DNA of 64,000 nucleotides from Anaeramoeba ignava BMAN (lineage: Eukaryota > Protista > Anaeramoebae), in NCBI GenBank assembly GCA_028826165.1, contig JAPDFW010000097.1, positions 181,531-245,530 of the forward strand. Direction: 5' to 3'. A program made the position numbers and the translations under genes. Each line of letters opens with the position of its first letter. The stretch's first letter is position 1. Positions 2,308 to 26,759 of this stretch are shown here, piece after piece. The notes under the pieces are model-generated. The model was not told the DNA's origin, made no database searches, and was given only the letters and a program-made list of their open reading frames with translations.

Positions 2308-5300
2308 ATGGATCTTTTCACAATTATTGAACAAAATCAAATTGAAAAATTAAAAGAAATTAAATTTATTGAAGAAAAAGAACCACAAACAAAACAAATT
2401 CAAGTTCAAAATTCAAAAAAAGAAAAAGAAAAAGAAATCATATTAAATTTTGCTATTATAAAAAAATCATCAAAAGAAATGATTGAATTATTAATTGCCA
2501 AAGGAGTCAAAACACATTTACAAGATCAAAACGGAAGAAATTCATTGCATATTGCAATTATAAATAATTCACCAATTGAAATACTTGATTTATTAATTCA
2601 AAAGGGAATTTCAGTCAATTCAACAGATAAACAAAATCAAACATGTTTACATTTTGCTTGTCAAAATAATTCATCAATAAAAGTGATTAAATATTTAATT
2701 TCAAAAGGAGGTGATATCAATGCAAGAACAAGACAAAATCAAACCATTTTGCATTATGCTTGCAGGAATCAATCACTTGAAATAATCAAATACCTTGTTT
2801 CCAAAAAACTGAATATTCATTCAAAAACAAACTACAATGAAACATTGTTGCATTATGCTTGCCAACATAATTCGATTGAAGTGATTGAATATTTGCTTGA
2901 AAAAGGACTTGATGTTAATGCAAAAACATTTGGAAAAGAAACAGCTTTGCATTATGCTTGCCAACATAATTCGATTGAAGTGATTGAATATTTGCTTGAA
3001 AAAGGACTTGATATTAATGAAAAAACAAATTTTAATCAATCAACATTGCATTTGGCATGTCAATATAGTTCATCAATAGAAGTGATTAAATATTTGATTC
3101 AAGAAGGAGTTGATATCAATGCAACAACAAACTCAAACCAAACAGCTTTGCATTATGCTTGTCAAAAAAATTCCTCCATCGAAATTCTTAAATATCTTGT
3201 TGAGAAGGGAATTGATATTAATGCAAAAACAGCAACTAATCAAAATGCTCTGTTTTATGCTTGTCAAAGCAAATTATCAATTGAAATAATCAAATTTTTA
3301 GTTGAAAAAGGAATTGATGTAAATGCGAAAACAAATTTAAATGAAACCGTTTTGCATATTGCTTGTCAACATAAATTACCATTTGAAACAATCAAATTTT
3401 TAGTTGAAAAAGGAATAGATATCAATGCACAAACAAATCAACAAAAAACAGCTTTACATTTTGCTTGTCAATATAATGCATCTTTTGAAATTATTAAATT
3501 TTTAGTTGAAAAAGGAATAGATATCAATGCACAAACTCGAACAGAACAAACAGCTTTACATTTTGCTTGTCAATATAATTCATCTTTTGAAATTATTAAA
3601 TTTTTAATTGAAAAGGGAATAGATATCAAATGCAAAAGCAAGACAAAATCAAACTGTTTTACATTATCTTTGTCAAAACCCAAATCTCTCATTTGAAGCA
3701 ATCAAGTTTTTAGTTGAAAAGGGAATTGATATAAATTGCAAAACCAATCAAAATCAAACTGTTTTACATTATCTTTGTCAAAATCCAAATGCTCCATTTG
3801 AAGTAATCAAATTTTTAGTTGAAAAAGGAATTGATGTAAATGCGAAAACAAATGAAAATGAAACCGTTTTGCATATTGCTTGTCAACATAAATTACCATT
3901 TGAAACAATCAAATTTTTAGTTGAAAAAGGAATAGATATCAATGCACAAACATCTTTCAAACAAACAGCTTTACATTTTGCTTGTCAATATAATGCATCT
4001 TTTGAAATTATCAAATTTTTAATTGAAAAGGGAATAGATATCAATGCAGAAAGCAATTTAAAATACACAGCTTTACATTTAGCCTTTCAAAACGATTCTT
4101 CATTTGAAATTATTAAATTATTACTTTACAAAGGAATTGATATTAATGCAAAAGCATTTCACGAAGAAAGTGTTCTTCATTTTGCATGTCAATTTAATGC
4201 TTCAATTGAGATAATCAAGTATTTAGTTGAGAATGGAGTTGATATTAATGCAAAAACAGCAAGTGGAGAAACTGCTTTAGATTATCTTTGCTCAAAGAAA
4301 CCATCCTTTGAAATTATTCAGTATTTAGTTGAGAAAGGAATTGATCTTCATTCAAAATCAAATCACAATCATACATCTTTACATCTAGTTTGCCTTAGCA
4401 ATCCATCATTTGAAATAATTCGTTATTTGATAGAAAAAGGAGTTGATGTAAATACAAAAACAGAAAGAAATGAAACAGCTCTTCATTTCGCATGCCAAAG
4501 CAATCCATCATTAGATACTATTAAACTCTTGGTTGGAAAAGCGGTTGATATCAATGCAAAAGCATATCACAATGAGACAGCTCTTCATTTCGCTTGCCAT
4601 TATAAACTCTCTTTTGAAATCATCAAATATCTAATTGAAAGTGGAATCGATATTCATGCCAAAACAGACGCAAATCAAACTGCTCTCCATTATGCTTGCC
4701 AAATTAATCCATCATTTGCAGTCGTTGAATATTTAATTTCAAAAGGAATTGATATTAACCTCAAAACAGCATCAAATGAAACACCTTTATCCATTTCAAT
4801 TCAAAATGGAAATCAGAAACTCGTTCAAATTCTATTAAATAACCAAGCCAATTTTTATGATTTACAAGAAAAAGAAATCTCAAAAGAATTTCTTGAATCC
4901 TTTTTACAAGTTTATTCAATCAATGAAGATTTCAGCAATTTCTTCATTTCAGATGATAATTTTCCTGATTATAAAATTGAATCAAATGATTTCTTCAAAT
5001 TTAATGTTCATAAATTAATTCTATTAACAAGATTTGATAATGATGAAACAATTTTACAAAAATTTATTGATATTTGCAAAACAAAATCAAAAGAAGAAGT
5101 TCAAATTATCCTAAATTTCCTTTACACAGGCTTTCCCAATTTTGGAGAAATTATTGAAAAATTCCAACATCAAATTGAAAAAAATTCCCAAAATGATTCA
5201 AAATCAAGTTATTTTTGGGGAGGAAGACAATTTGAAGAGCAAAAAACAATTTTGAGAGAAATTGAACAAAACCAAACTAGAATTGAAGATTTTTTCAAAC

Positions 5301-5686
5301 AAATGGGATTTGATTCAAATTGGATTGAATCCAAAAAAGGAAGAAAAGGAATAATAAAAGATCTTCATCAATTATATCAAAATGAATCAACAAAAGATTT
5401 TACGATAATTGTTGAGGAAAAAGAAATTAAAGCTCATAAATTGATATTAATAATAAGAAGTGAATTATTCAAAGGAATGTTTCTAAGTGTTCAAGATTCA
5501 TCAAATCAAGTTCATGATTATTCAAAGAAATCATTTGAAACAATTAATCAATTAATTTATTTCTTCTATCACAATGAATTTGATGAAACAAAAGAAATTA
5601 CAAAAGAAATTATTCAAGAATTTAAAGGTTTAAAAGATTATTTCCAATTAAATCAACATTCCAAAATTGATTTTTCAAAATTTTAA
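2308..5686 (+). CDS. Ankyrin-repeat protein with C-terminal BTB/POZ domains (one apparent +1 frameshift at ~3628-3630)
   Basis: More than 20 ankyrin repeats (TALHYACQ...EIIKFLVEKGIDINA). C-terminal BTB (DFTIIVEEKEIKAHKLILIIRSELF). ORFs 2242-3696 and 3869-5686 join if one A is removed from GATATCAAATGCA. The ATG at 2308 follows a TTTCATTT motif. Confidence 0.88.
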
Positions 5687-5753
5687 TTTTGATTAATAAA
5701 AAATTTTGGATTGAAAATGTTTTTTTTCATTTTTTTACTTACAAAAGAAAATT

Positions 5754-8708
5754 ATGAAAGCTTATTCAATAAATAAACCACTATTTATTGCATGTGAAGA
5801 TAATTCATTAGAGGACTTAAAAAAAGCGATTGAAGATGAATTGAATGTTAATGGAGAAAATTATGGATCTGAAACACCTTTGCATGTTTGTTGTAAACAA
5901 AAAGATCCAAGTATAATTGAATTGATGAAATATCTTATTGAAAAGGGAGCATTTCCAACAAATCTAACTTCCCAACAAGAAACCCTTTTGCACTATTCTT
6001 GTCAATATCAAAATTCAATTGAAATTATCAAGTTTCTTGTTGAAAAAGGTGTTGATTTAAAACAATCAACAAAAGAAAGCAAAGAGACAGTTTTGCATTA
6101 TGCTTGCAAATTCCAAAAAGAAAATCTTCTTGAAGTGATCCAATTTCTTGTTTCAAAAGGAGCTGATGTGAATGCAAAAACAAAAGATAATGAAACTGTT
6201 TTGCATTTTGTTTGTCGATATCAAAATACAATTGAGGCCGTTAAATTTTTGGTTTCCAAAAAAGCAGATTTGAAAACAAAAACAACCTCTCAAGAATCCA
6301 TTTTGCATTATGCTTGTAAATATGGCAATTCCTCAGAGATTATCCAATTTCTTATTGAAAAGAAACTTGATGTGAATGCAAAAACAAAGGAGAATGAAAC
6401 TGCTTTGCATTTTGTTTGCCAAAAAGAGAATTCAAGTAAACTTGTCTCTTTACTTCTTGCAAAAAAAGCCAAAATCAAAATTGCAAATAATTTAAAACAA
6501 ACCCCTTTGCATCTTGCTTGTCAACTTCAGGATTCTTTTGAAATTGTCAATCTTCTTATTCAAAAAGGTGCGAATGTCAAAGTCAAAGATGATCACGAAC
6601 AAACACCATTGCATTTAGTTTGCCAAAAAAAACCAAATAATTTTCTTCAGGTTGTCAAAAGTCTTGTTGAGAAAAAAGCAGATGTAAATGCCAAAAACGA
6701 TGAGCTTCAAACACCTTTGCATTATGTTTGCCATATCAAAAGAAGAACACTTCAGGAAATTATTGACTCTATTGGTGACAAACAAGAAGATAACGAAAAT
6801 GGATTAAAAGACTTGCTGGAGGTTGTCAAATTTCTTGTTTCAAAAGGAGCTGATGTTAATGCAAAAAACGAAAATCAACAACTTCCTTTACATTATGCTT
6901 GCCAAGAAAAAAATTCAATTGAAATTGTGGAATTTCTTGTTTCAAAAGGAGCTGATGTGAATGCAAAAACAAATGAGAATGAAACTGCTTTTCATTATGC
7001 TTGCCGAACAAGTTTAATTGAAGTAATCAAGTTTTTATTCGAGAGAGAAGTTGATATTAATGAATCAAACGATGAAAATGAAACACCTTTACATTTAGCT
7101 TGCAGATTTAGAGATAATAACTCACTTGAAGTAATTAAATTCCTTGTTGAAAAAGGAGCTGATGTTAATCGAGTCACAAACAAACAAATGACTCCCTTGT
7201 TACTCATTGCGAAATACCACAGTTCATTTGAAATTCTTAAATATCTTGTTGACAAAGGAGCAAATATTCATGCAAAAACAGCACAAGAAGAATCAGTTTT
7301 GCATTTTTGTGTTTCTGGAAATGAAAATCCATTTGAAGTGGTCAAATATTTTGTTGAAAAAGGGGTTGATGTCAACAGTTTAACAAGTGATTCAAAAGAA
7401 TCCCCATTGCATATGGCTTGTGAATTCTCAACTAAGTTATCTCTTGAAGTGATTCAATTTCTTGTTTCAAAAGGATCTGATGTGAATGCAAAAACAAAAG
7501 ATAATGAAACTCCTTTGCATTTTGCTTGTCAATATCAAAAATCGCTTGAAGTGATTCAATTTCTTGTTTCAAAAGGAGCTGATGTGAATGCAAAAACAAA
7601 AGGGAATGAAACTCCTTTGCATTTTGCTTGTTCTAATAAAGAGATGGAGAGTTGTCACAAAATTATCAAATTTATTGCTGAGAAATGTGATAATTTGAAT
7701 GCGAAATCCAAATATGGAATAACACCTCTTTCCACTTTAAAGAAAAACAAAAATTCATTTGGAATTCAAATTCTATTAATGAATGATTTAGCTCTTACTC
7801 TTTTGGAACAAAAAGGGAGAATTTCTGGAAAATTGAAAAATCTTTTACCCAAAGTTTATTCAATCAATGAAGATTTCAACAAAATCTTAAAATCAAATGA
7901 TAATTTTCCTGATTACAAAATTGAATCAAGTGATTTCTTCAAATTTAATGTTCATAAATTAATTCTATTAACAAGATTTGATAATGATGAAACAATTTTA
8001 CAAAAATTTATTGATATTTGCAAAACAAAATCAAAAGAAGAAGTTCAAATTATGCTAAATTTCCTTTACACAGGCTTTCCCAATTTTGAAGAATTTACCA
8101 AATTATTTTCTTTTGAATTAGATCAAAGTGAAAGTGAAAGTGAAGATGAGATTCAAAAAGAAAAAGAAAGAAAAAGGGAAGAAGAAGAAAAAAAATATGT
8201 TTTCCAAAGAAATTTAAGTTTTTCAGATGTTTCTTCAGAAGATGAAAAGCAAAGTAAAAATTATTTCAATGGATTCAAACAAGAAATGAAGAGAATTGAA
8301 GATTTTTTCAAACAAATGGGATTTGATTCAAATTGGATTGAATCCAAAAAAGGAAGAAAAGGAATAATAAAAGATCTTCATCAATTATATCAAAATGAAT
8401 CAACAAAAGATTTTACGATAATTGTTGAGGAAAAAGAAATTAAAGCTCATAAATTGATATTAATGATAAGAAGTGAATTATTCAAAGGAATGTTTCTAAG
8501 TGTTCAAGATTCATCAAATCAAGTTCATGATTATTCAAAGAAATCATTTGAAACAATTAATCAATTAATTTATTTCTTCTATCACAATGAATTTGATGAA
8601 ACAAAAGAAATTACAAAAGAAATTATTCAAGAATTTAAAGGTTTAAAAGATTATTTCCAATTAAATCAACATTCCAAAATTGATTTTTCAAAATTTTCAA
8701 AAATTTAA
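5754..8708 (+). CDS. Ankyrin-repeat protein with C-terminal BTB/POZ domains (paralog of the upstream gene)
   Basis: Intact 984-aa ORF with ETPLH.AC ankyrin repeats. C-terminal BTB region is nearly identical to the upstream gene. Confidence 0.92.
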   Translation: MKAYSINKPLFIACEDNSLEDLKKAIEDELNVNGENYGSETPLHVCCKQKDPSIIELMKYLIEKGAFPTNLTSQQETLLHYSCQYQNSIEIIKFLVEKGVDLKQSTKESKETVLHYACKFQKENLLEVIQFLVSKGADVNAKTKDNETVLHFVCRYQNTIEAVKFLVSKKADLKTKTTSQESILHYACKYGNSSEIIQFLIEKKLDVNAKTKENETALHFVCQKENSSKLVSLLLAKKAKIKIANNLKQTPLHLACQLQDSFEIVNLLIQKGANVKVKDDHEQTPLHLVCQKKPNNFLQVVKSLVEKKADVNAKNDELQTPLHYVCHIKRRTLQEIIDSIGDKQEDNENGLKDLLEVVKFLVSKGADVNAKNENQQLPLHYACQEKNSIEIVEFLVSKGADVNAKTNENETAFHYACRTSLIEVIKFLFEREVDINESNDENETPLHLACRFRDNNSLEVIKFLVEKGADVNRVTNKQMTPLLLIAKYHSSFEILKYLVDKGANIHAKTAQEESVLHFCVSGNENPFEVVKYFVEKGVDVNSLTSDSKESPLHMACEFSTKLSLEVIQFLVSKGSDVNAKTKDNETPLHFACQYQKSLEVIQFLVSKGADVNAKTKGNETPLHFACSNKEMESCHKIIKFIAEKCDNLNAKSKYGITPLSTLKKNKNSFGIQILLMNDLALTLLEQKGRISGKLKNLLPKVYSINEDFNKILKSNDNFPDYKIESSDFFKFNVHKLILLTRFDNDETILQKFIDICKTKSKEEVQIMLNFLYTGFPNFEEFTKLFSFELDQSESESEDEIQKEKERKREEEEKKYVFQRNLSFSDVSSEDEKQSKNYFNGFKQEMKRIEDFFKQMGFDSNWIESKKGRKGIIKDLHQLYQNESTKDFTIIVEEKEIKAHKLILMIRSELFKGMFLSVQDSSNQVHDYSKKSFETINQLIYFFYHNEFDETKEITKEIIQEFKGLKDYFQLNQHSKIDFSKFSKI

Positions 8709-9604: not shown

Positions 9605-9905
9605 ATGGAAGAATTTATTGTTAATGAAATTATAGCACCTTTAAGGAAATTTTTTAAACAAAGTTATCAATTTCTTGTGAGATGCACAAAACCTGATAAA
9701 AAAGGTTTTTAAAAACAAAATTTTTTTGGAAAATAAAATAATTAAAAAAAATTTTTAAATTATATTCTTTTTTCTATTTAAATAATTAGAATTTTCTAAA
9801 ACAGCTCTTGCTACTTTAATTGGATTTGCTATTATGGGAACTATTGGTTTTGTTATTAAATTAATTTTTATGGTTATTAATAATATTCTTATTGGAAGTG
9901 GATAA
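9605..9905 (+). CDS. SEC61G: Protein translocon subunit Sec61-gamma (SSS1/SecE); exons 9605-9704 and 9790-9905; absent from the ORF track
   Basis: Spliced translation [71 protein letters not shown] contains the family signature RCTKPD.KEF..A.A..IGF.IMG.IGF.IKLI. GT-AG intron at 9705-9789. Confidence 0.95.
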
Positions 9906-10143: not shown

Positions 10144-13100
10144 ATGCAACCTCATTATCTTAATAAACATATTGCTTCCAGTCCATTATTTCAAGCAAAA
10201 ACATTTGAAGATAAATCTAAAGCATGGGTTGGAATTAATAATAAGAAATATAGAAAACAAAATCAAGTTTCATATACAACAGCACAAAAACTTGATATGC
10301 CCCCAGAACATTTAAGAAAATTAGTCAGAGATCATGTAGATTTAACAGAAAAAAAATTTAGAACTGATAAAAGAATATAACTTCTTTTTAAAATTTTAAA
10401 ATATATAAAATTATATATAAAATTATTTAAATTATTTATAAAATTAATTATAAAATTAAATATAAAATTATTTTAAATTATTTATTAACTTTTATATAAA
10501 ATTATTTATAAAATTATTAAATATATAAAATTATTTATAAAATTATAATATATAAAATTATTAATAAAATTATTTATAAAATTAAATATAAAATTAAATA
10601 TAAAATTATTTATAAAATTATTATAAAATTATTTTAAAATTAAATATAAAATTAATTATTTATAAAATTATTTATAAAATTATTAAAATAAAATTATTTA
10701 TAAAATTATTAATAAAATTATTAATAAAATTAAATATAAAATTAAATTATTTATAAAATTATTTATAAAATTATTTATAAAATTAAATATTAAAAAATTA
10801 AATATAAAATTATTTATAAAATTATTTATAAAATTAAATATAAAATTATTTATAAAATTAATTATAAAATTATTTATAAAATTAAATATAAAATTATTTA
10901 TAAAATTATTTATAAAATTATTTATAAAATTATTTATAAAATTATTTATAAAATTATTTATAAAATTATTTATAAAATTATTTATAAAATTAAATATAAA
11001 ATTATTTTATTTATTTTTATTATATTTAATAAAATTATTTTGGGAATATATTAAAGGCCTTGGGAAGATGTTAGAGATGTTCCAGTTATTTATCACGTAA
11101 ATGGTGCAATCACTTTTATAAATAAAGTTCCACGAGTTATTGAACCAATATATAGATCACAATGGGGAACAATGTGGATCATGATGAGAAGAGAAAAAAG
11201 AGATCGAAAACACTTTAAAAGAATGAGATTTCCTCCTTTTGATGACGAAGAACCACCATTAGATTATACAGATAACATCATAGATTTAGAACCACTTGAA
11301 CCAATACAAATCGAATTGGATGATGAAGAAGATGAAGAAGTTTATCATTGGTTTTATGATTACGAACCACTTAAAGACACAAAATTTGTCAAAGGAACAG
11401 CATACAGAATTTGGAATTTAACAGCACCAATCATGGCGACTTTATACAGATTAGGATCTCAAATTGTCAGCGATTTAAGCGATCGAAATTATTTTTTCCT
11501 TTTCGATCCACCAAGTTTTTTAACCGCAAAGGCTCTCAATTTGGCAATTCCATCGGGTCCTAAATTTGAACCTCTTTATAGAGATTATGATGAAACAAAA
11601 GAAGATTGGAATGAATTTAACGATATCAACAAAATTATAATAAGAAGACAAATACGAACAGAATATAGAATTTTTTATCCCCATCTTTATAACAACAGAC
11701 CTCGTTCTGTGGAAATTAGTCATTACCATTATCCTTGCAATGCATATTTTAAAACAAAAGATCCAACTTTACCTCCATTTTATTTTGATTCCATTATCAA
11801 TCCCATTTCATTCCGAAATGTCGATCCTGTTCCTTCTGAATATGAATCAAAGAAATCTAAATCAAACAAAAAACAATTCAATTCACGCGATGAAATTCTA
11901 TCAGAAGAGGATTTTTTCGACGATGATTTTGTGCTTCCTCAAGATATCGAACCTTTTCTTGAAGATACACCTTTATTCACATCAAACACAACGGATGGAA
12001 TTTCATTATTTTTCGCACCTTTCCCTTTCAATCAGAGATCAGGACGAATGATTCGATGCCAAGACATTCCACTTGTGAAAACTTGGTATCAAGAACGATG
12101 CCCACCAAATCAACCTGTGAAAGTCCGAGTTTCTTATCAAAAACTATTGAAAACTTGGGTTCTCAACATGGTTCATCATCATCACGGGAAACCAAGAAAG
12201 AAAGTCAGTCTTTTGAAGACTTTTCGACAAACAAAATTCTTTCAAACAACAGAAATCGATTGGCTTGAAGCCGGATTGCAAGTTTGCAGACAAGGATATA
12301 ATATGCTTCATTTATTAATCCACAGAAAAAATGTTAATTATCTTCATTTGGATTATAATTTTAATCTAAAACCTGTCAAAACTCTTACAACAAAGGAAAG
12401 AAAGAAATCCCGATTTGGAAACGCATTTCATTTATGCAGAGAAATTCTTCGTCTTACAAAATTAATTGTTGATTGTAATGCACAATATCGTCTTGGTAAT
12501 TTTGATGCATTTCAACTTGCAGATGGGATTCAATATGTATTTTCACATGTTGGTCATTTAACAGGGATGTATCGATATAAATATCGTTTAATGAGACAAG
12601 TAAGTTTCTTTTTTTTTTCTTTCAAAAAACAAATCAAAATTTATTCATTCATTTTTTTTTAATTTTTTAGATAAGAATGTGCAAAGATTTAAAACATTTG
12701 ATATATTACAGATTTAATACAGGTCCTGTTGGTAAAGGTCCTGGTTGCGGATTTTGGGCTCCAATGTGGAGAGTTTGGATTTTCTTTCTTCGTGGAATTG
12801 TTCCTTTATTAGAAAGATGGCTCGGTAATTTATTAGCAAGACAATTTGAAGGAAGAGTCACAAAAGGAATTGCAAAAACAGTTACAAAACAAAGAGTAGA
12901 AAGTCATTTTGATTTGGAACTTCGTGCAGGTGTTATGCACAATATTTTGGATATGATGCCAAAAGGTGTTCGCACAAATAAATCCCGAATTATTGCTCAA
13001 CATCTTTCTGAAGCTTGGAGATGTTGGGGAAAAGGAACCAAAATTATGATGTCAAATGGATTTTATAAAAAAGTTGAAAATATTAAATTGGGTGATTCTG

Positions 13101-16100
13101 TTTTGGGTGATGATAACACTCCAAGAAAAGTTGTTGAGTTAATGGGAGGCAAAGATTTACTTTATAGAATCAAAACAATCATCCCAAATTCAAATTCAAA
13201 TTCAAATTCAAATTCAAATTCAAAAAATGATAGCTTTGTTTGCAATAGCAACCATTATTTGGTTTTAACAACAAATCATAAACCTTCATTAAAAACAAAA
13301 AAGCATTCTATAAAAGTTAAATTTCCACAAGTTTCAGAAGATAATAACTTAGGTTTTAAATGTTTGAAGATTCAATCTAAATGTTTTAAATGGAATTCCC
13401 ATTGGTTTACAAATATGCAAAATTCAAAAACAAAAGCAAAAAAACAAGCTCAAAAAATACTTCAAAGCTTATTAAAAAGAAAAATTTCCGCTCAATTAGT
13501 TCATTTGAAATCAAAAAAGAAATATCAAATTAGAATTTCCAAAAGTCAAAACCAAAAAACAGAACATTTAAATTATGTTTATGGTTATTCAAAAAATTCA
13601 AAATATGAAATGTACAACTCTCAAAATTTAGCAAAATTAGCAGCAGAAAAATTCTTTTTAGAAAAATCAAAAGAAAATATAATTTGGGAAATTTCCGTTA
13701 AAGATTTCTTGAAGTTTCAAAAGAAAAACCCAAAGTTAACTTCATCTATAAGATTATTCCGTTCAAATGAGATTACTTGTTTCCCTCAAAAATCTTATGA
13801 TATGACACAAGTTATTGATTCTCTTTACGAGAAGATGAATATTTCTTTTGTTGATAAGATCAATGAAAATGAAATGGCTTGGTTAATTGGAGTTTGGTTA
13901 GCAAATGGAAAGACAAAAAAGCCTCTCATTTATGCTACTAAAAATATTCAAAGTTCTTTTATTAATCGATTAAGAATTCTTTCAGAAAAAATGGGATTGA
14001 AAATTGTATTTTGTGATGAAGAAATTGAAAATCAAAAAGATGATTATTATCCTTTATTATTATCAACTTGTTCTGGAGATATTATCCAAAACGGAAAAGA
14101 AAGAGCAAATGAAAATTCAAAAAATATATTCACTTCTATTCTAAAGGAATTACAAATTTGGAAGAATAAGAATGTTTCTGAAATTACCATTTCCAATTTA
14201 ACAAATCAATCAAAAGATTTTAGATTGAATTTATTGGCAGGATTTGCTGATAGTTCTGGATATGTATCAGGAAATTTATATCAATTCAAACAAAATTCAA
14301 TATTTCATTTCCAGAAAACAATTTTCTCATTATGTCAGAATGTTGCACGCTCACTTGGAATGACTTCTAATTTAGAAATTAATGAAGAAAAGAAATGGAA
14401 ATCATATAAAGTTTTGAAAAATTTAGAAATGAATATTAGTGAGTTTGGAGTTTGGAGCATTCCTTGTGTTATTTCTTCTAAAAGAATTCACAAATATGAA
14501 TTAAAAGAAAGAACAAATTTATTAGAATTTGAAGTTATTCCTGAAGGATATGGAGATTATTATGGATTTCAAATTGACGGGAAAAATGAAAGATTTATTT
14601 TATATGATTCTTTTATTGTGGCACATAATTGTTGGAAAGCGAATATACCATGGAAAGTTCCAGGTAAATATTTTTTTAATTTTATTTTAATTTTATTTTA
14701 ATTAATTTTATTTTAATTTTATTTTAATTTTTATTTTAATTAGGTCTTCCATCAGCTATTGAAAATATGATATTAAGATATGTTAGATTAAAAGCAGATT
14801 GGTGGACAAGTGTTTCACATTATAATAGAGAACGTGTACAAAGAGGAGCAACAGTTGATAAAACAGTTATTCGTAAAAATCTTGGCAGATTAACAAGACT
14901 TTGGTTAAAAAGAGAACAAGAAAGACAACATAATTATTTAAAAGATGGGCCATATATTTCATCAGAAGAAGGAATTGCAATTTATACAACAACAGTACAT
15001 TGGTTAGAAAGTCGAAAATTTTCACCAATTCCTTTCCCACCACTTTCATATAAAAATGATACTAAAATATTGGTAAGTTAATTAATTATTTAAATATTTA
15101 TTCGATTTTATATTGATTTTACATTTATTTAAAAAAAATTTTTTTTAAAGGTTTTGGCGCTTGAAAGACTTAAAGAAGCTTATAATGTTAAAAATAGATT
15201 AAATCAATCTCAAAGAGAAGAACTTGGATTAATTGAGCAAGCTTATGATAATCCTCACGAAGCGTTAAATAGAATCAAAAGACACTTACTAACACAAAGA
15301 ACATTCAAAGAAGTCGGAATTGAATTTCTTGATTTATATTCACATTTAATCCCTGTTTATGATATCGAACCACTTGAAAAAATCACAGATGCCTATCTGG
15401 ATCAATATTTATGGTATGAAGCAGAAAGACGCAATCTTTTCCCGAATTGGATCAAACCTGGAGATACAGAACCACCACCACTTTTGGTTTATAAATTTTG
15501 TCAAGGAATTAACAATCTCACAAATGTATGGGAAACATCACAAGGAGAATGCCTTGTTCTTTTACAAACTCATTATGAGGATTTTTACGAGAAAATCGAT
15601 TTAACTTTATTGAATAGATTGCTGAGATTAATTGTTGATCCAAATATTGCTGATTATATGACAGCTAAATGCAACGTGACAATATCTTTCAAAGATATGA
15701 GCCATGTTAATTCATATTCTCTTCCAAGAGGATTGCAATTTGCGCCTTTTATTGCTCAATTTTATGGTCTTGTGCTTGATCTGCTTGTTATTGGCCTGAA
15801 AAGATCAAGCGAATTAGCAGGACCACCACAACTCCCAAACGATTTCATGACATTCCCAGACTACAAAATTGAAACAAAAGCATCCTCTCAGAATTTATAT
15901 GAGATATATTGAGAAATTTTACATGCTCTTCAGATTTACAAAGGAAGAAGCAAAGGATTTAATCCAAAGATACTTAACAGAACATCCAGATCCAAACAAC
16001 GAAAATATTGCAGGTTTTAATAACAAGAAATGCTGGCCACGAGATTGCAGAATGAGACTTATGAAACATGATGTCAATTTGGCACGCGCAGTGTTCTGGG

Positions 16101-19100
16101 AAATCAAGAATCGTTTACCACGTTCAATAACAACAATCGAATTCTCAAACTCGTTTATTAGCGTTTATAGCAAAGACAATCCCAATCTTCTCTTTAATTT
16201 ATGCGGATTTGAAGTACGAATTCTACCCAAAATTCGTGCACCAAATGAAGAGCTTATTAGTCAGGAAGGTGTTTGGAACTTACAAAATGAAAGTACAAAA
16301 GAAAGAACTGCTCAAGCTTTTCTCAAGATTGACGAAGGAGCAATTAAAAGATTTGAAAATAAAATACGTATGCTTTTAATGAGCTCAGGATCAACAACTT
16401 TCACCAAAATTGTGAATAAATGGAATACTGTTCTTATTGGTTTAATGACTTATTTCCGAGAAGCAACAATCCACACACAAGAATTACTAGATCTTCTTGT
16501 CAAATGCGAAAACAGAATACAAACAAGAGTCAAAATTGGACTTAATTCTAAAATGCCCAGTCGATTTCCTCCTGTTGTGTTTTATTGTAATGGGAAAGGA
16601 ACAAAAATAAGAATGGCAGATGGTTCAAGAAAACTTGTTGAAGATATTATTATTGGAGATCGGGTTATGGGAGATAATGGAATAGCTAGAGATATTGATT
16701 CTTTGATGTCAGGAAAATCAAAGTTATATCGTGTTTTTCCAAGAGTTAGTAGAGAAGGTGAAAAAAGTGAATCACATTTAAAAAATCCCAATACGTTCAG
16801 ATATTTCGATAGCGGAATAGTTTGCAATCCAAATCATATTCTAGTCGTACATGTACCTCCAAAATCTGAGATTAAGGAAATAGATATATCATCTCCTGAA
16901 AGAAAACAAGGTTCTTTTTGTGTAAGATATTATGAATTAAAACAGAAAAATGGTATATTGAGACCTGTTGAAGTTGAAAAAAGAATAGGATACGATTCCC
17001 ACAATCAATGCGAAATGTACCACACAAGAGAAGAAGCTTTGAAAAGAGCAAATGAAATTTATTTACGTAGTAATTTAGTGTGGGAAGTTTCAGTCTCAGA
17101 TTATTTGAAATATCAAAAATCTGTTAAAAATCCTGTTCCTTTGAAAATGAGTTACTCAAATCAAATTGCGCATTTCCCTGATTCTCCCAAAATATCCAAA
17201 TTTAAATTAATTGTCAAAAATTGTTTTTCTCTTTGCAGCAAAAATGGAGATGAAGTTACAGATGAAATACTTGAAAATATTTTATGGATAATAGGTTTAT
17301 GGTTGGCAAACGGTGATTGGGAAAAAACTATATTTTCTTTTAATATACAAGAAGTTGAATTGATTAAAAAATTGGAGAAAAGCGCCAAACAAATTTATCT
17401 CAATACAAATACACACAAAAAAGAGGGATTTGGAATTGGAGTTTCTTTGAGCAACTTCCAAAGAAAAAATATTTTGAGAACGATCATAAAGAAATTGGGA
17501 TTAATGAATAAAAACAAATTGGTTGAGGAAAATATAATAACAATGTTTTTACAAGAATCTGTAAGAAATCGTCTAGCTTTATTAGCAGGAATTATCGATG
17601 GAGATGGAAGTCGAAAGGAGAAAGAAGCAATTGTTGTAACTCAATCAGTTCAACATAAGGATATTTTAAGATTAGTTTTTTATCTTTCTCGATCTTTAGG
17701 TTTTCGCACTTTTGATAATCGTTATGTTAAGAAAGATAAGACATACTTACTTAATAAAAAACAAAATTCAAGCATCCCAGTACTAAATGAAATTGGAGAA
17801 GTATATATTTCTGGTGATGTCCACGAAATACCTTGTTCTCTTTCAAAGAAACAAAATATTAATTCAATCACATCGAATAGAAATTTATTTTTGTTTGATA
17901 TTGTTGAAGAAGGATATGGAGAATATTATGGTTTCTCAGTCAAAGAAAATCAATCACCATTATTTTTATACGATAATTTTTTAATTGGTCATAACTGTCC
18001 TAAAGAACTTGGTGGTCTTGGAATGCTTTCCATGGGACATGTATTGATTCCTCAATCAGATTTGAGATTTGCAAGCATGGTTTCACAAGAAACAACACAT
18101 TTCAGATCAGGTATGAGCCATGATGAAGGACAAATGATCCCCAATTTGTTCCGTTATATCCAATCTTGGGAATCTGAATTCATTGATTCTCATCGTGTAT
18201 GGGCTGAATACGCTTTGAAAAGACAAGAAGCACGCAACCAGAACAGAAGATTAACATTAGAGGATTTGGAGGATTCTTGGGATCGCGGAATACCTAGAAT
18301 CAATACACTTTTCCAAAGAGATCGCCACACTTTGGCTTATGATAAGGGATGGCGACTCCGCACAGATTTCAAGCAATATAATGTTTTAAAACAGAACCCG
18401 TTTTGGTGGACTTCTCAAAGACATGATGGAAAACTTTGGAATTTGAATAATTACAGAACAGATGTTATTCAATCACTTGGAGGAGTTGAAGGAATTCTTG
18501 AGCATACACTTTTCAAAGGCACTTATTTCCCGACATGGGAAGGTTTGTTTTGGGAGCGATGCTGTTTGAAAAAAGATACACTTATTCTTTCCTCAAATGG
18601 TTCAAAAAAGGCTGTTCAAGATGTTGTTTGTGGAGATTATTTAATGGGAGATGATTTTCTTCCTCGAAAAGTACTTCGTTTGATTCATGGATTTTCTCAA
18701 CTATATTCTATAAATCCTCAAAATGCAAAACCATATACAGTCACACCAGAACATGTACTTTGTATTGCTGTTTCATCGCAATCTCCCTTTATTTCTTGGA
18801 ATCCTTATTCACGTGTTTGCCGTGTTTCTTGGTTAGAAAATCACTGTGTTAAACAAAAACAATTCAAATTTTTCAATCGCGAAATTGCATTAAATTCTGC
18901 TTATAATTTTGTTGAAGAATTAAAATTCAATCCCAAAGTTAATTTATCAGGTGAAGTTCTGGAAATTACTGTTGAAAAATATGTTTCAATGAGCAAAGAA
19001 TGGAAAAAACATTATGTTGGATATCGTAATTTACCTTCTTCTTCTTCTTCTGAAAATGATATAGATTTAGAATCAATAGAAAATATTAAAATACAAAAAA

Positions 19101-22100
19101 CTATTGAAACACCATTTGAAGTTAGAAAAGCAGGATTTGGAGAATATTTTGGATTTCAATTAGATGGAAATTCTAGATTTTTACTTGCAGATTATACTGT
19201 TACACACAATTCTGGGTTTGAAGAAAGTATGAAATATAAGAAATTAACAAATGCACAACGAACAGGATTAAACCAGATTCCGAATCGAAGATTTACATTG
19301 TGGTGGTCACCAACAATCAATAGGGCTAATGTATATGTTGGATTCCAAGTTCAATTGGATTTAACAGGAATATTTATGCATGGAAAAATTCCAACTTTGA
19401 AAATATCACTAATCCAAATTTTCCGCGCTCATTTGTGGCAGAAAATTCATGAGAGTGTAGTTATGGATCTTTGTCTCCGTGATGATCAAAAGGTTTTATT
19501 AGCTGATGGAAGAAGAGAAAAAGCAGAAAATATTGTAATTGGTTCAAAACTTGTTGGTGATGATGGAAATGTTTGCACTGTTACTGCTATAAACAAAGGA
19601 GTTGCGCCCTTATATAAATTCTCACCAAATCACGATGGTGGTAGCACTGCTCCTGGATTTAGAGAGGAAGATGAGATTGTTTGTACACCAAATCATATAT
19701 TGTGTATTCTTCTTCCTTCACCTTCCATAACTAAAACATCAAATGGCTTCAATGTTAGTTGGGCAGAAATTGATAAAAATTCTGTAGTTATTAAGAAAAA
19801 ATTAGTTAGAGTAGATCCTCAACAATTTGGACTTCTTCCTGATGCTTATGAAAGATGCAAACACTCTGTTGAGAATTATTTTAATTCATTAAAGGAAGCA
19901 AATTGCGCAACCAGTTTAGTACATCTTAAATCTCAAGAGAAATACCAAATCAAAATTACTGCTGTTCCTGAAGGTTCAAAATATAAAATTAGCACTCTAG
20001 ATTTCTCATATGGAAATCATGATAGAGCAGGTGTTCCAACAATGAAAGACTCAAAACTTGAAGCAGAAAAATTATTAGAGAGTAAAAACAAAATGGATTT
20101 GGTATGGGAAGTTTCAGCTAAAGAATTTTATAATTTTTCAAAGATCAAACCATTGATAGCTTCTCAGTGCTCTATGTATCGTTTGCCTCTGTGTTGTAAC
20201 TCATGGAATAATACGAAAAATATGTCAAGCCCTCTTGTTAATTTAGCTCATAAATATTCTCTTCCTTTATCTGATATGGGATGGATAATTGGATTGTGTT
20301 TGAGCGAAGGAAATGTTGTTGACACAAAAATTACTGTAAATCTAAAAAAGGATCAAACAATATTTAAGAGATTGAAGAGAATTACTGAAAAATTAGATCT
20401 TCAAATGATTATCAATGATTTTAAATCTTCTGTGTTACTCTCTATTTTTTCAAAAGGAAAAAACAAATTCAATGAAAAGAAATTTAACAAATTTTGGGAA
20501 ATGATAACTTCTATTGTTTTGAATAGTAACTCAGAGAGATATATTTCTGAAAAGGATATATCATTATTACTCACTACACCAGAAGAATTTAAACTTGGAT
20601 TTCTTGGTGGTTTGATTGACTCTGATGGAGCACTTGTTAAAACAGAACAGAGAAATATATATTACTCAATTTGTCAAGCTGAAAATCATAGTTACATTAT
20701 CAAAATTGCTCAATTAATGGCTAGAAGTGTTGGTTTCCAAGCAAATGTTTCTCAATTTGTCGATAAAAATAAACAATTCCAAAATAATCTGGAATTGCTT
20801 ATTGGAGGATCTACTAAAATATTTGAAATTGATTGTGTTCTTCCAAATAATAGAATAAAAAATTTCCACAAGATCCAACCTTTCAGCAAAAATCCAATGA
20901 GATGGGGATTTAAAATCACACTTTTAGAACCAGGATCTTTCACAGGCTTTCAATGCAACAATAAGAGCAAAAGATTTTTAATGGCTAACGGAACTGTAAC
21001 ACATAATTGTCAAGTCTTCGATCAACAACTCGATGTTCTTGAGATTGAAACTGTTCAGAAGGAAACAATTCATCCACGAAAATCTTATAAAATGAACAGT
21101 AGTTGTGCGGATATCCTTTTATTTGCAGCATATAAATGGCAGGTTTCTCGACCGTCGTTGATGACTGACAAGAATGATTATTACGATGGAACAACATCTG
21201 TGAAATATTGGCTGGATGTGCAATTGCGATGGGGTGATTTCGATTCCCACGATTGCGATCGATATGCAAGAACAAAATTTCTGGATTATACAACAGATAA
21301 CGTTTCTCTTTATCCCTCTCCAGTAGGATGTTTAATTGCGATAGATTTAGCATACAATCTGCATTCAGCATACGGAAACTGGTTTTATGGATTGAAATCG
21401 CTAGTTTCCCAAGCTATGGCCAAAATTATGAAGGCCAATCCTGCTCTTTATGCTCTTAGAGAAAGAATTCGAAAAGGATTGCAATTATATTCTTCAGAAC
21501 CAACTGAACCCTATTTATCTTCCCAAAATTACGGCGAGTTGTTTTCAAACCAGATCATTTGGTTTGTTGATGATACAAATGTTTATCGAGTGACAATTCA
21601 TAAAACATTTGAAGGAAATTTAACAACAAAACCGATAAACGGCGCCATTTTTATTTTCAATCCTCGAACTGGACAATTATTTTTGAAGATTATTCACACA
21701 AGCGTTTGGAAGGCTCAGAAACGTTTAGCTCAACTTGCCAAATGGAAGTGTCTTGGGAAAGATACTCCTGTTATGATGAATGATGGATCAATTAAAAAAG
21801 TGCAAGATGTTATTTGTGGAGATTATTTAATGGGAGATTCCTCAGAGCCTCGCGTTGTTCTTTCAACATCTTCGAATTCAGGATATTTGTTCAAAGTGAA
21901 AACTTTGGTAGATCTTAAATTGCATGGTTTTGGACATTTTGAAACTGAGGAATTTGTTGTGAACCAGAACCATATTTTATCACTTAAATTTGCGAGAACT
22001 TCTGTTGCCAAACCTGTTTATATTCCAGAGGATAATATGCTTGTTCTGAAATATGTTCCTCGTAATAAGAAATTGTTTTATCACCGCGAAGATAATTTGG

Positions 22101-24289
22101 TTGATTCTCTTCAAGAGGTTGAAGAGTGTTTCTGTGTTTCTGGATTTTATTCGCAAAGAGATGATTTGAAAATGCAATTTTACAATTCAATTCCAGAAGC
22201 AAGAATTGCAGCTGAAGAAAAATATCACAGTTTAATTTCTTCTCAAGAAGTTTATCAATATGGAGATGTGATTGATATTGCTTTGGACGATTATTTAGAG
22301 CTTTCTGATGAAGTTAAGGAATATTTACGAGGATATCGAGTTGGAGTTAATTTTGGATCTTTTGCATCAGAAAACGAAAGTTTAATTTATGAAGAAATAA
22401 TTGAGAATTCAAAAGGAGCTTCTGATGAAAAATTAGTTGAAGTTTTGAAGAAATACAAAACAAGTTCACAAACAATTCGCAAGCAAGTTTTATCAGGATT
22501 TGTTAAATTTTTTGGGAAGAAAATTGGAGATTACATAATCTTTGAGAATTTAACAAATGAGATGAATGAAGAAATGATTTACGTTGCAAGATCATTAGGA
22601 ATATTTGCAGCATATGAATTAGATGAAGGAAAACAGAAAAATAAGAAGCGAGTTATAATTGAAAATTTGGATGAGAATTTAAAACAAAAATCGATTCTCT
22701 ATAAATTCGAAATTGAACAAATTCCCAACGGAGAATTCTTTGGATTCGAACTTGACGGAAACGGACGTTTTCTTCTTGGCGATTTCACAGTTACACACAA
22801 CACAGCAGAAGAAGTTGCAGCGTTAATCCGATCACTCCCAGTTGAAGAGCAACCGAAACAAATCATTGTAACAAGAAAAGGGATGCTTGATCCATTAGAG
22901 GTCCATCTTCTTGACTTCCCGAACATTGTAATCAAAGGGAGCGAGCTTCAACTTCCGTTCCAATCGTGCATGAGACTTGAGAAATTTGGGGATTTGATCC
23001 TGAAAGCAACCGAGCCGAAGATGGTTTTATGCAATTTATATGATGATTGGCTGTCAACAATCAGTTCATACACTGCGTTTTCAAGATTGATTTTAATTCT
23101 TCGAGCTTTGCACGTTAATAACGAAAAAGCACGCATGATTCTGAAGCCAACAAAACTAACAATCACAAAACCTCACCATGTCTGGCCAAGTTTAACCGAC
23201 GAAGAATGGGTCAAAGTTGAGGTTGCATTGAAGGATTTAATTCTCGCCGATTTCGGAAAAAGAAACAACGTCAACATCACAAGTTTGACACAATCCGAAA
23301 TTCGGGACATAATTTTAGGAATGGAAATTGCGCCGCCATCTTTACAAAGACAACAAATGGCGGAGATTGAACAACAAACACGCGAAATCAGCCAACACAC
23401 CCAAGTCACAACAAGAACAACGGACAAAATGGGGAACGAATTACTGACTGTAACAAGAAGCAACTACGAACAGCAGGCTTTCTCTTCGCGCACAGATTGG
23501 AGAGTGCGCGCAATCTCGGCAACAAATCTCCATTTGAGAACAAACAATATTTTCGTGACCTCAGACGATGTTAACGAGGCCGCGAACATGTATGTTTTCC
23601 CCAAAAACATCCTGAACAAGTTCATCTCAATTTCCGATCTTCGCACACAAATTTTCGGGTATCTCTATGGGATAACCCCGCAAGACAACCCCCAAGTCAA
23701 AGAGATCCGCGCGATTGTGATGGTTCCTCAGTGGGGAACGCACCAGAGCATAAACATCCCTAATCAGATCCCTGAGCATGAGTATCTCAATGATCTCGAG
23801 CCTTTGGGATGGATCCATACTCAGCCCAAAGAATTCGGACAACTTCCTGCTCAAGATCTTATTCTTCATTCCAAAATTGTTACTGAAAATCCGTCATGGA
23901 ATATTGACAAATCAATTGTCATCACTTGCGCTTTCACTCCCGGTTCAGTTTGTTTAACATCTTACCGTTTGACCCCTCAGGGGTTTGATTGGGGTCGTAA
24001 GAATCAAGGGAATTCTGATGCTAATCCTCATGGTTATTCTCCTTCTTTTGCTGAAAAAGTCCAGCTTCTTCTCTCGGATCTTTTTCTTGGTTTTTTTATG
24101 ATTCCTGATGATTTTTCTTGGAATTTTAACTTCTTCGGTCATCGTCATTCTCCTTCAATGAAATACGGTCTTGTTTTGGGTAATCCTCTTCCTTTTTATC
24201 ATGAAATTCATCGTCCTGCTCATTTCTTTGATTTTTCTTCAATGGAAGATGATTTGGTTCCTGTTGAAAATGATGATGTTTTCAATTAG
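10144..24289 (+). CDS. PRP8: Pre-mRNA splicing factor PRP8 precursor containing five inteins. Exons ~10144-10376, 11057-12599, 12671-14663, 14744-15072, 15151-24289. Apparent +1 homopolymer frameshift at ~15876-15879.
   Basis: Near-continuous match to PRP8 motifs: [89 protein letters not shown], RNase H region ([12 protein letters not shown]) and the C-terminal Jab1/MPN domain ([10 protein letters not shown]). GT-AG introns at 12600-12670, 14664-14743 and 15073-15150 restore the frame. Confidence 0.98.
10381..11040. repeat. Low-complexity (ATAAAATTATTT)n-type repeat filling PRP8 intron 1
   Basis: Almost pure A/T with a 12-bp periodicity, clearest at 10900-10990. Confidence 0.85.
13022..14629 (+). 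mobile_element. PRP8 intein 1 (536 aa), LAGLIDADG-type endonuclease with degenerate catalytic motifs; inserted at HLSEAWR|CWKANIPW
   Basis: Starts [13 protein letters not shown], block [10 protein letters not shown], ends [24 protein letters not shown], +1 Cys. Removal restores the conserved [12 protein letters not shown]. Endonuclease motifs [10 protein letters not shown] and [10 protein letters not shown]. Confidence 0.96.
16586..17995 (+). mobile_element. PRP8 intein 2 (470 aa) with LAGLIDADG endonuclease; inserted at FPPVVFY|CPKELGGLG
   Basis: Starts [14 protein letters not shown], block [10 protein letters not shown], motifs [10 protein letters not shown] and [10 protein letters not shown], ends YYGFSV...LIGHN, +1 Cys. 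Confidence 0.96.
18563..19210 (+). mobile_element. PRP8 intein 3 (216 aa), mini-intein without endonuclease, at the classical fungal PRP8 intein site LFWERC|SGFEES
   Basis: Starts [14 protein letters not shown], block [11 protein letters not shown], ends [22 protein letters not shown], +1 Ser. No LAGLIDADG motifs seen. Confidence 0.96.
19472..21007 (+). mobile_element. PRP8 intein 4 (512 aa) with LAGLIDADG endonuclease retaining both acidic residues; inserted at HESVVMDL|CQVFDQ
   Basis: Starts [13 protein letters not shown], block [10 protein letters not shown], motifs [10 protein letters not shown] and [10 protein letters not shown], ends FTGFQC...[12 protein letters not shown], +1 Cys. Confidence 0.96.
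21749..22801 (+). mobile_element. PRP8 intein 5 (351 aa) with truncated/decayed endonuclease; inserted in the RNase H-like domain at QLAKWK|TAEEVAAL
   Basis: Starts [14 protein letters not shown], block [11 protein letters not shown], ends [22 protein letters not shown], +1 Thr. Only endonuclease remnants remain ([21 protein letters not shown]). Confidence 0.96.
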
Positions 24290-25087: not shown

Positions 25088-26518
25088 TTAAATGAAATAA
25101 CTTTCAAGTTCATCAGTAACCCATTTATCAGGAGGACCAGCTAAATAATTTTTAGCTTCATCTGTATCGTGAATCATTCCATCAGGTAGATTATAATTAG
25201 AATCAATATTTGAATAACCAGGTTGTAAATTATGAACTAAATAAAAATCATTCCCATAACCACCACCAAAAACTGGACCATAATAAAAACCAGACCAAGT
25301 TGAACGACCTTGTTTATAAGTGAATCTTTCAGGTTTTCTATCCCCTTTATCATTTCTTAATGAAAAAATAAATGAACTTGAATCATAAATATCTTTTCCA
25401 TTTATTGAATATGTATATCCAACTTCAGTAAATCCTCCAAAAATAAAATTATCTTTGGTTTTGATAATAACTAATGTTTTTCCTTTCCCATCAACTGCTT
25501 TATGCCATTTTTGAGAAGAAAATCCATCTCTTTTTGCTGAAAATCCTTTTTTCATTTTGGAAAAGAATTCATCATCATTTATCCATTCTTTTAATTTCTT
25601 GATATATTCAATTTCTTTAACAATTTCTGAATCAAATTTAATTCTTGATTTGAAAATGAATGAATTTTCTTTTTCAATAAATTCTTTGAATTCTTTTTCA
25701 TCATTTTCATTTTGAAGTTTTTGGAATTGAGTTAATTTTCTGAACATTTCATTTGGAATTAAATCTTCTTTTAAAGTATCTTTAAGTTCTTCACTTGTAA
25801 GATCAATAAATCTGATTTTATCAATAATATTGGAAATTTGATTTTGTAATTTTTCTTTTTCTTCTTTATTCAGTTCTTTTTCTTTATTAATAATTAATTT
25901 ATGTTTTCCCCATTTTATTATTGATTGAAATAGTTCAAATTCGTTTATTGTAAGTGCATCATTTGATAAAATTAAATTTAAATGATTTTCTTCAAGTTCA
26001 AGAAAATGAGAAGTTTTGATAAATTCATCAAAATTTTCAGAAATAAATCGATAAGAAGAATCTAATAATTGATTTAAATTCATTGATTCAGATAATTTAA
26101 GAACATCAACAATAGTTTCAAATTGTAAATTGTTTTTGATAAAATTTGAAGAAAATTCAATTAATTCATCAATTAAATATTTTGATGAAAAAATTAAAAT
26201 TTCAATTGCATTTTCTAAATTAATTTCAATTTTTCCTGAATAAAAATAATTCAAAATTGAAGATAGAATTGAACTTGAAACATCTTGAAGAATCAATTTA
26301 TTTTCTTGAAATTCTTTCATTTTGGATTTGAAAAGAGATTTAAAATAATGACTTCTTGAAGAAAGAGTTGATTTATGAGTTTTAAATGAAGTTTTGTTTT
26401 GTTCACAAATTATTTCAAAATCAAAATAACTTTCTTCTTGGTTTTCTTTTTGGTTTTGATTTTGAAATAAACTTTTTAAATCGTTTGAAAGTTTTTCTAA
26501 ATTTGAATAAGTTTCCAT
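25088..26518 (-). CDS. BTB/POZ-BACK-TLDc domain protein
   Basis: BTB (DFEIIC...FKTHKSTLSSRSHYFKSLF...MKE), BACK (FLELEENHL..ILSNDAL..NEFELF..IIKW) and TLDc (FSAKRDGFSSQKWHKAVDGKGKTLVIIKT..NFIFGGFT...YGPVFGGG). First ATG at 26518. Confidence 0.92.
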   Translation of the reverse strand: METYSNLEKLSNDLKSLFQNQNQKENQEESYFDFEIICEQNKTSFKTHKSTLSSRSHYFKSLFKSKMKEFQENKLILQDVSSSILSSILNYFYSGKIEINLENAIEILIFSSKYLIDELIEFSSNFIKNNLQFETIVDVLKLSESMNLNQLLDSSYRFISENFDEFIKTSHFLELEENHLNLILSNDALTINEFELFQSIIKWGKHKLIINKEKELNKEEKEKLQNQISNIIDKIRFIDLTSEELKDTLKEDLIPNEMFRKLTQFQKLQNENDEKEFKEFIEKENSFIFKSRIKFDSEIVKEIEYIKKLKEWINDDEFFSKMKKGFSAKRDGFSSQKWHKAVDGKGKTLVIIKTKDNFIFGGFTEVGYTYSINGKDIYDSSSFIFSLRNDKGDRKPERFTYKQGRSTWSGFYYGPVFGGGYGNDFYLVHNLQPGYSNIDSNYNLPDGMIHDTDEAKNYLAGPPDKWVTDELESYFI

Positions 26519-26759
26519 TTTATTCAAAAATTTTGAAAAGAAAAAAATGGAAAAAATTAATAAACAGAAAAAAATTTAATAAAGGAAGGCAAAAAAAAAA
26601 TTAATAAAGGAAGGCAAAAAAAAATTTTTTTTATTGATCATTTTAAATTAATTCCAATTTATTTTATTTTAAATTTAAAAACAAATTTCCAAATTAATAT
26701 TAATTCAATTTAATTCAAAAAAAAGATAAAATTTTAATTTCAAAAAAATCAATTTTCAA

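What the first reader, a model, noticed from the sequence alone, without database searches (positions are those of the whole stretch)
13022..22801. One PRP8 gene carrying five inteins at five different sites (~2085 aa of intein in a ~4400-aa precursor)
Seen: five in-frame insertions (13022-14629, 16586-17995, 18563-19210, 19472-21007, 21749-22801). Each begins with Cys, has a block-B His, ends in His-Asn and is followed by Cys, Ser or Thr. Excising them restores conserved PRP8 sequence exactly. Known: nuclear inteins are rare in eukaryotes; PRP8 inteins are known mainly from fungi, usually one per gene at the FWEKA|SGFEE site (intein 3 here). Intein-rich genomes have been reported in Anaeramoeba, so this locus may already be partly described. 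Inference: the core spliceosome scaffold must finish five protein-splicing reactions, spread over its N-terminal, RT/thumb, linker, endonuclease-like and RNase H-like regions. RNA splicing here depends on a protein-splicing chain, a possible metal- or redox-sensitive control point in an anaerobe.
Basis: partly seen in the sequence, partly recalled or inferred. Interest (0 to 1): 0.95.

Follow-up and report, generated by a model that had tools for sequence, protein, structure and literature searches.

The report
Known five-intein Anaeramoeba PRP8 gene
The single gene for the core RNA-splicing protein PRP8 in this anaerobic amoeba really does carry five self-removing protein inserts (inteins), but this gene was described in 2023, and some fungi in public databases carry even more.

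Summary
Observation confirmed, already published. Five in-frame inserts (536, 470, 216, 512, 351 aa; 2085 in all) sit at the stated coordinates in the genome's only PRP8 gene. All are Hom_end-type Hint inteins (Cys1, block-B His, His-Asn, +1 Cys/Ser/Thr), and the flanks abut exactly on intein-free PRP8. Public contigs that lack the gene's three GT-AG introns keep both intein 1 junctions and the start of intein 2, so these are not removed as RNA. Gallot-Lavallee et al. 2023 (PMC10710043) report this gene in Anaeramoeba ignava BMAN: five inteins, sites a, b, d, e and AKWK/TAEE. Added here: endonuclease decay series (intein 4 keeps both catalytic motifs, 2 one, 1 none, 5 a remnant, 3 deleted); inteins 2 and 4 group with same-site inteins of other organisms, so the five were not copied from one another; a frameshift and a garbled 5' stretch are assembly errors; precursor about 4,430 aa. 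Five is no record: Dispira simplex PRP8 has seven intact inteins and a broken eighth, a lead for which I found no paper. The metal/redox control idea is untested and borrowed from Cryptococcus. The scan's earlier notes on this are on the same stretch, not other DNA.

The parts
10144..10377 (+). PRP8 5' coding stretch (Met to ...RTDKRI, 78 codons), start of PRO8NT
   Evidence: PF08082 positions 1-40 match here; translation
10404..11040 (.). AT-only 12-bp tandem array standing where about 21 conserved PRP8 codons should be; most likely an assembly fault (or an AT-rich intron with a lost small exon)
   Evidence: TRF; a spliced contig continues before 11057 with coding letters absent from the assembly and has 301 letters left, as 99 codons need; missing piece not found elsewhere in the genome
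11057..12599 (+). PRP8 exon (PRO8NT end, PROCN)
   Evidence: 69.5% identical to intein-free PRP8 99-597; covered by spliced contig
12600..12670 (+). spliceosomal intron 1, GT-AG, 71 nt
   Evidence: absent from contig record 1, whose pieces abut
13022..14629 (+). intein 1, site d, 536 aa; +1 = human Cys719; LAGLIDADG domain present but both catalytic acidic positions lost (WLANG, FADSSG)
   Evidence: both junctions kept in spliced contigs; site name from PMC10710043
14664..14743 (+). spliceosomal intron 2, GT-AG, 80 nt, 34 nt after intein 1
15073..15150 (+). spliceosomal intron 3, GT-AG, 78 nt
15880..15880 (+). one extra base in an A run that shifts the frame in the assembly; not in the transcript contig
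   Evidence: table 4 (one letter left out, depth 128.6 of 128.6); frames
16586..17995 (+). intein 2, site e (by elimination), 470 aa; +1 = human 1318; block C acidic residue lost (WLANG), block E kept (IIDGDG)
   Evidence: 5' junction in spliced contig, colinear to about 17931; groups with same-site inteins
18563..19210 (+). intein 3, site a, 216 aa mini-intein without endonuclease; +1 = human Ser1507; Cys at -1 next to Cys1
19472..21007 (+). intein 4, site b, 512 aa; +1 = human Cys1594; both LAGLIDADG motifs keep an acidic residue (CLSEG, LIDSDG); PI-SceI-like architecture
   Evidence: model pLDDT 88.6, Foldseek PI-SceI E 6.6e-26; groups with same-site inteins
21749..22801 (+). intein 5, RNase H-like site AKWK|TAEE ('f' of the 2023 paper), 351 aa; +1 = human Thr1841; first endonuclease half deleted, second degenerate
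   Evidence: no other occupant of this site in 172 other sequences covering it
22802..24289 (+). PRP8 C-terminal extein (RNase H-like end, Jab1/MPN) and stop
   Evidence: matches human PRP8 1841-2333; single copy in the genome

Best explanation
This is the single, essential PRP8 gene of Anaeramoeba ignava (very probably strain BMAN). It has been invaded one site at a time by five selfish class 1 inteins of the VMA1/PI-SceI type. The mRNA loses its three GT-AG introns but keeps the intein sequence (shown for intein 1 and the start of intein 2; inferred for 3-5). The roughly 4,430-aa precursor is then trimmed by five self-catalysed reactions (Cys1 N-S shift, attack by the +1 Cys/Ser/Thr, His-Asn cyclisation), giving a normal PRP8 of about 2,350 aa (inferred from motifs and from PRP8 being single-copy; not shown by experiment for this protein). 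The inteins persist because they sit in conserved sites where only exact deletion is tolerated; their homing endonucleases are at different stages of decay. Splicing is most likely constitutive, with no selected regulatory role.
For: Exact boundaries and motifs; Pfam Hint for all five, LAGLIDADG for 1, 2, 4; exteins abut on intein-free PRP8; one PRP8 locus in the genome; spliced contigs keep intein 1 and 2 junctions, six of six extein differences are silent; run X1 holds 0.96 of the words of 16000-22900, two thirds of which is intein; intein 4 folds like PI-SceI; inteins 2 and 4 group with same-site inteins, SH-aLRT 96 and 99; at least 41 Hom_end_hint matches in the genome, among them two in VMA1, as published for BMAN; the paper names the same five sites.
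Against: No tool named the organism; the identification rests on the matching five-site pattern, the AKWK/TAEE motif and other BMAN-only features. No ligated-junction peptide or splicing assay exists for these five inteins (the paper tested RPB2 and ASCC3 inteins only). Run X1 is not on record as RNA; it is taken as RNA because its contigs lack the introns.
Confidence: 0.9

Rival explanations
1. The inteins have been kept as a conditional gate: metals, oxygen or thiol oxidation stall one or more of the five reactions and so throttle spliceosome assembly in this anaerobe.
For: Cu and Zn inhibit the Cryptococcus Prp8 intein in vitro, Cu also in vivo (PMC6805012); Zn was tested on another A. ignava intein. 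All five use Cys1, three have Cys+1, and intein 3 has a Cys at -1 found in none of 118 other sequences covering that site.
Against: Metal and oxidant inhibition is a general property of Cys-inteins (established knowledge), not a sign of selection. The genome holds dozens of inteins in unrelated proteins. A. flamelloides shares only two Prp8 sites. Other eukaryotes carry different sets of sites, which fits turnover better than a kept switch.
Confidence: 0.08
2. The five inteins arose by one founder hopping from site to site inside the gene (non-allelic, intragenic homing).
For: Inteins 1, 2 and 4 align end to end (23-29% identity, E 1e-21 to 1e-43) and intein 1 is the closest match of intein 4 within the genome; inteins 3 and 5 share a 37/39-nt patch; the paper proposes one b/d intragenic move in A. 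flamelloides.
Against: Inteins 2 and 4 score far higher against same-site inteins of other organisms (258 and 336 bits) than against any neighbour (143, 125) and group with them in the tree; the five need three changes on that tree (quick tree, 134 columns, weak backbone). The 3/5 patch is what codon bias gives on a conserved motif (11 of 12 codons shared, 8.4 expected, p about 0.06). An older intragenic origin of inteins 1, 3 or 5 is not excluded.
Confidence: 0.1
3. The locus is a decaying pseudogene (frameshift at 15880, missing 5' codons) or the inserts are removed as RNA, so no five-fold protein splicing takes place.
For: The assembly has a frame break and lacks about 21 conserved codons near the 5' end.
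Against: A contig without introns lacks the extra base and supplies coding letters before 11057; extein differences are all silent; no other PRP8 in the genome; the inserts are open frames without GT-AG ends and stay in the spliced contigs.
Confidence: 0.02

Closest known systems
Anaeramoeba ignava BMAN Prp8 with five inteins (Gallot-Lavallee et al. 2023, PMC10710043)
   Same: Five inteins; sites a, b, d, e and the RNase H site AKWK/TAEE; sizes inside the published 160-550 aa range; intein-rich genome with two VMA1 inteins.
   Different: Nothing found. The paper's main text gives no per-intein endonuclease status or transcript check for Prp8; its supplement was not available.
Fungal and protist Prp8 inteins, sites a-g (Green et al. 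2018 PMC5784728, 2019 PMC6805012; Monier et al. 2013 PMC3749507)
   Same: Same host protein, Cys1/His-Asn class 1 chemistry; site a is the common fungal site; b and e occur together in Capsaspora.
   Different: Usually one or two per gene. The letter f was already in use for a sixth site in 2018, so the 2023 'novel site f' label clashes; I could not tell from the texts where the older f lies.
S. cerevisiae VMA1 intein PI-SceI (Hom_end_hint plus LAGLIDADG)
   Same: Same Pfam families; model of intein 4 matches 1vde at E 6.6e-26, TM 0.63/0.74.
   Different: About 17% identity; different host site; intein 4 has a longer insert between block B and the endonuclease, with two predicted strand-strand-strand-helix units.
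Multi-intein PRP8 of zoopagomycete fungi (Dispira, Tieghemiomyces, Coemansia; public sequences, annotated only as hypothetical or PRP8)
   Same: One PRP8 with 5 to 7 in-frame Hint inserts, sharing sites a, b, d or e.
   Different: Different site sets (542, 600, 872, 926, 1419, 1621 in Acanthamoeba numbering), none at AKWK|TAEE; no paper found.

Membership tests
Class 1 cis-splicing intein | In-frame insertion in a conserved host whose flanks abut on intein-free homologues | tested here: met
Class 1 cis-splicing intein | Hint domain homology | tested here: met
   PF05203 over cut-off in all five; Hint fold in the intein 4 model
Class 1 cis-splicing intein | Cys/Ser at 1, block-B His, terminal His-Asn, Cys/Ser/Thr at +1 | tested here: met
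Class 1 cis-splicing intein | Insert retained in the mature mRNA | tested here: met
   Met for both junctions of intein 1 and the 5' junction of intein 2 in intron-free contigs; for inteins 3-5 only indirect
Class 1 cis-splicing intein | Self-excision with extein ligation | not testable with these tools
   needs proteomics or a reporter assay; not reported for these five
Homing-competent LAGLIDADG intein | Two LAGLIDADG motifs each with the catalytic acidic residue | tested here: inconclusive
   Met by intein 4 only; one motif in intein 2; neither in 1; remnant in 5; absent in 3. Motifs do not prove activity.
Homing-competent LAGLIDADG intein | Cleavage of the empty allele | not testable with these tools
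   needs an endonuclease assay
PRP8 | PRO8NT, PROCN, RT/linker, endonuclease-like, RNase H-like and MPN parts in order, single copy | tested here: met
A. ignava BMAN Prp8 (published gene) | Five inteins at a, b, d, e and AKWK/TAEE | tested here: met
A. ignava BMAN Prp8 (published gene) | Sequence identity with the deposited record | not testable with these tools
   the window's own protein is listed without name or source; organism names are coded
Conditional (sensor) intein | Splicing changes with a physiological signal in the native host | not testable with these tools
   no data for this locus

The most novel reading that the evidence does not exclude
One or more of the five inteins, most plausibly intein 3 with its unusual Cys(-1)-Cys1 junction in the 1585-loop region, has been kept as a thiol- or metal-sensitive switch, so that oxygen or metal stress stalls PRP8 maturation and thereby all intron removal in this anaerobe.
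Probability: 0.08. Interest if true: 0.7.

Novelty: already known. Interest (0 to 1): 0.17.

Why it matters
As a discovery it adds little: the gene, the count and the sites are in print. It remains a good natural test object: nearly half of the precursor of the spliceosome's core protein is intein, and one gene holds five stages of endonuclease decay. The more useful outcome is the by-product: public PRP8 sequences show at least 14 occupied sites against 7 or 8 in the papers I could read, and a fungus (Dispira simplex) with seven intact inteins in one protein, above the five called remarkable in 2023. That deserves its own follow-up.

Tried and rejected
Pseudogene or RNA-level removal: rejected. 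Second intein-free PRP8 copy: none. Further inteins at other sites in the large 3' ORF: none. Gene conversion between inteins 3 and 5: not significant against codon bias. One clade of all five: not favoured (the careful tree did not finish). A same-site relative of intein 5: none by two searches; its nearest matches are 26-31% identical inteins in thymidine kinases, AAA ATPases and helicases from metagenomes, which I did not assign to taxa. Intein 1 homologue search gave only three hits because of the length filter; the Bathycoccus site-d intein was not in my set, so that published link was not tested. The AT array 10404-11040 was not sent to the reads tool, which states that it turns long repeats away, and the loose-end letters were not used as a query.
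Full report
Observation. Translation of the window shows a PRP8 gene on the + strand from 10144 to 24289. Each begins with Cys, ends in His-Asn and is followed by Cys, Cys, Ser, Cys and Thr. All five pass the curated cut-off of Pfam Hom_end_hint; inteins 1, 2 and 4 also pass Hom_end. Cys1, the block-B His and the terminal His-Asn are invariant among them. Extein pieces, each aligned by itself to an intein-free PRP8, abut across all five sites. In human numbering the +1 residues are 719, 1318, 1507, 1594 and 1841; in yeast about 792, then 1390, 1579, 1666 and 1913. This is far beyond chance.

Is the gene alive? It is the only PRP8 locus of the 42.8-Mb genome. One public run holds the stretch. 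Laid on 11045-17030, its contigs lack three GT-AG introns (12600-12670, 14664-14743, 15073-15150), so they are spliced RNA, although the run's kind is not on record. The same contigs run through both junctions of intein 1 and the 5' junction of intein 2, and are colinear to about 17931; a microsatellite at 13178-13232 was skipped, so no single contig spans intein 1. They lack one base at 15880, which removes the frame break, and continue before 11057 with coding letters that the assembly lacks; the 301 letters left fit 99 codons. Nine base differences from the assembly are all transitions; six of six in exteins are silent, two of three in inteins change a residue. I searched the model piece by piece and left the joined step out.

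Anatomy. Intein 4 keeps an acidic residue in both LAGLIDADG motifs; intein 2 keeps it in the second only; intein 1 in neither; intein 5 has lost the first half of the endonuclease and keeps a degenerate second; intein 3 is a mini-intein. A confident model of intein 4 (pLDDT 88.6) matches PI-SceI over its length (E 6.6e-26). Only intein 4 is a candidate for active homing; that is an inference from motifs.

Origins. The five are only 23-31% alike over long stretches. Inteins 2 and 4 score best against inteins at the same PRP8 site in other organisms (258 and 336 bits) and group with them in a quick tree of the splicing domains (SH-aLRT 96 and 99). Intein 1 is nearest, among the sequences I held, to glomeromycete inteins at another PRP8 site; inteins 3 and 5 are nearest to metagenomic inteins in thymidine kinases, ATPases and helicases. 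Their places in the tree are unresolved. No second occupant of the intein 5 site was found among 172 other sequences covering it. The picture is separate arrivals by homing, not serial copying within the gene.

Mechanism. Shown: open frames, motifs, exact flanks, single copy, retention of intein 1 and part of 2 in spliced RNA. Inferred from established intein chemistry: each Hint domain excises itself and ligates its flanks, and since PRP8 is essential and single-copy all five reactions must finish. Not shown by anyone: ligated junction peptides for this protein. Persistence needs no benefit, because only an exact deletion is tolerated at such sites. The regulatory reading is possible but unsupported: Cu and Zn inhibition is published for the Cryptococcus intein (PMC6805012); here the only specific hint is a Cys at -1 of intein 3, seen in none of 118 other sequences.

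What is known. [quoted passage not shown] That is this gene: intein 1 = d, 3 = a, 4 = b, 5 = the new site, 2 = e by elimination. The genome fits BMAN in other ways: at least 41 Hom_end_hint matches and two inteins in VMA1, which the paper reports for BMAN only; earlier scan notes mention a three-intein dynein and an RtcB intein (not checked by me), also in the paper. No tool named the organism, so a small doubt about the strain remains. Seven Prp8 sites a-g were listed by 2019 and a-f in 2018, so the 2023 label f is reused.

Five is not a record. Among 120 listed homologues, PRP8 of Dispira simplex has seven in-frame inserts with Cys...His-Asn ends, all over the Hom_end_hint cut-off, and an eighth that spans a frame break upstream. 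D. parvispora (partial) has six, Tieghemiomyces and several Coemansia five, Entrophospora four. Fourteen distinct sites are occupied in the sequences I saw. Searches of the paper library found nothing on these, but the library is incomplete.

Verdict. Real, correctly read, and already published for what is almost certainly the same gene. Novelty: already known. Interest 0.17: the checks add transcript support and an endonuclease decay series, and the side lead on fungal PRP8 is worth a separate look.

Noticed in passing
L032:1616-15154 (P0009, Dispira simplex, GCA_027478255.1) and L032:10-1500: PRP8 with seven intact Hint inteins (Acanthamoeba positions 600, 714, 926, 1419, 1502, 1589, 1621) and an eighth at 542 that starts in the upstream ORF and ends in P0009 across a frame break (intron, assembly error or decay not decided). 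More than the published five; no paper found.
   Followed up: partly
P0011, P0037, P0043, P0046, P0066, P0070, P0008, P0021, P0014, P0241, P0256: Other PRP8s with 2 to 6 inteins; further occupied sites at 872, 1453, 1540 and 1794 (the last just before the intein 5 site). Fourteen sites in all against 7 or 8 in the papers read. Coemansia site-872 inteins end in Arg-Asn and site-e inteins in Ser-Asn; Coemansia extein sequence at site a is diverged (FWQQQ).
   Followed up: partly
window 18560-18565: Cys at -1 directly before Cys1 of intein 3; none of 118 other PRP8 sequences covering the site has Cys there.
   Followed up: partly
window 19715-20095 (intein 4 residues 82-208) and the matching part of intein 1: Two predicted three-strand-plus-helix units between block B and the endonuclease, with sequence shared by inteins 1 and 4; possibly a doubled DNA-recognition region. 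Not identified.
   Followed up: partly
window 10404-11040 and 15880: Probable assembly faults in the gene: an AT-only tandem array in place of about 21 codons, and one extra A. Gene callers will split this PRP8 (the database protein P0001 is only the 3' 2788 aa).
   Followed up: yes
window 11213-16673: Nine transition differences between the run's contigs and the assembly (allele or culture difference); 16673 changes Asp30 of intein 2, a column invariant among the five inteins, to Asn.
   Followed up: partly
window 14664-14743: A spliceosomal intron lies 34 nt after the end of intein 1, so intron and intein coexist close together here; the 2023 paper proposes introns near empty sites as barriers to homing.
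   Followed up: no
window 9606-9902: A short intron-split gene just upstream whose translation by eye looks like the Sec61 gamma subunit; not tested.
   Followed up: no
window 2242-8708, 25088-26527, 34225-36114, 36253-46352, 47640-49403, 54950-55996: Neighbours: ankyrin(-BTB) array, BTB-BACK-TLDc protein, Sel1-repeat protein, a tandem array of F-box-like genes alternating with short ORFs, an M3 peptidase, and an ORF with a weak MDM10 match below cut-off for its best reading (35.6 bits, cut-off 25, E 6.5e-9).
   Followed up: no
L002, L003, L008, L009 (G000:C18 and C112): VMA1 gene with two inteins (VYVG|CGER and GGDF|SDPV), present on two contigs as near-identical copies; agrees with the 2023 paper's two VMA inteins.
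   Followed up: partly
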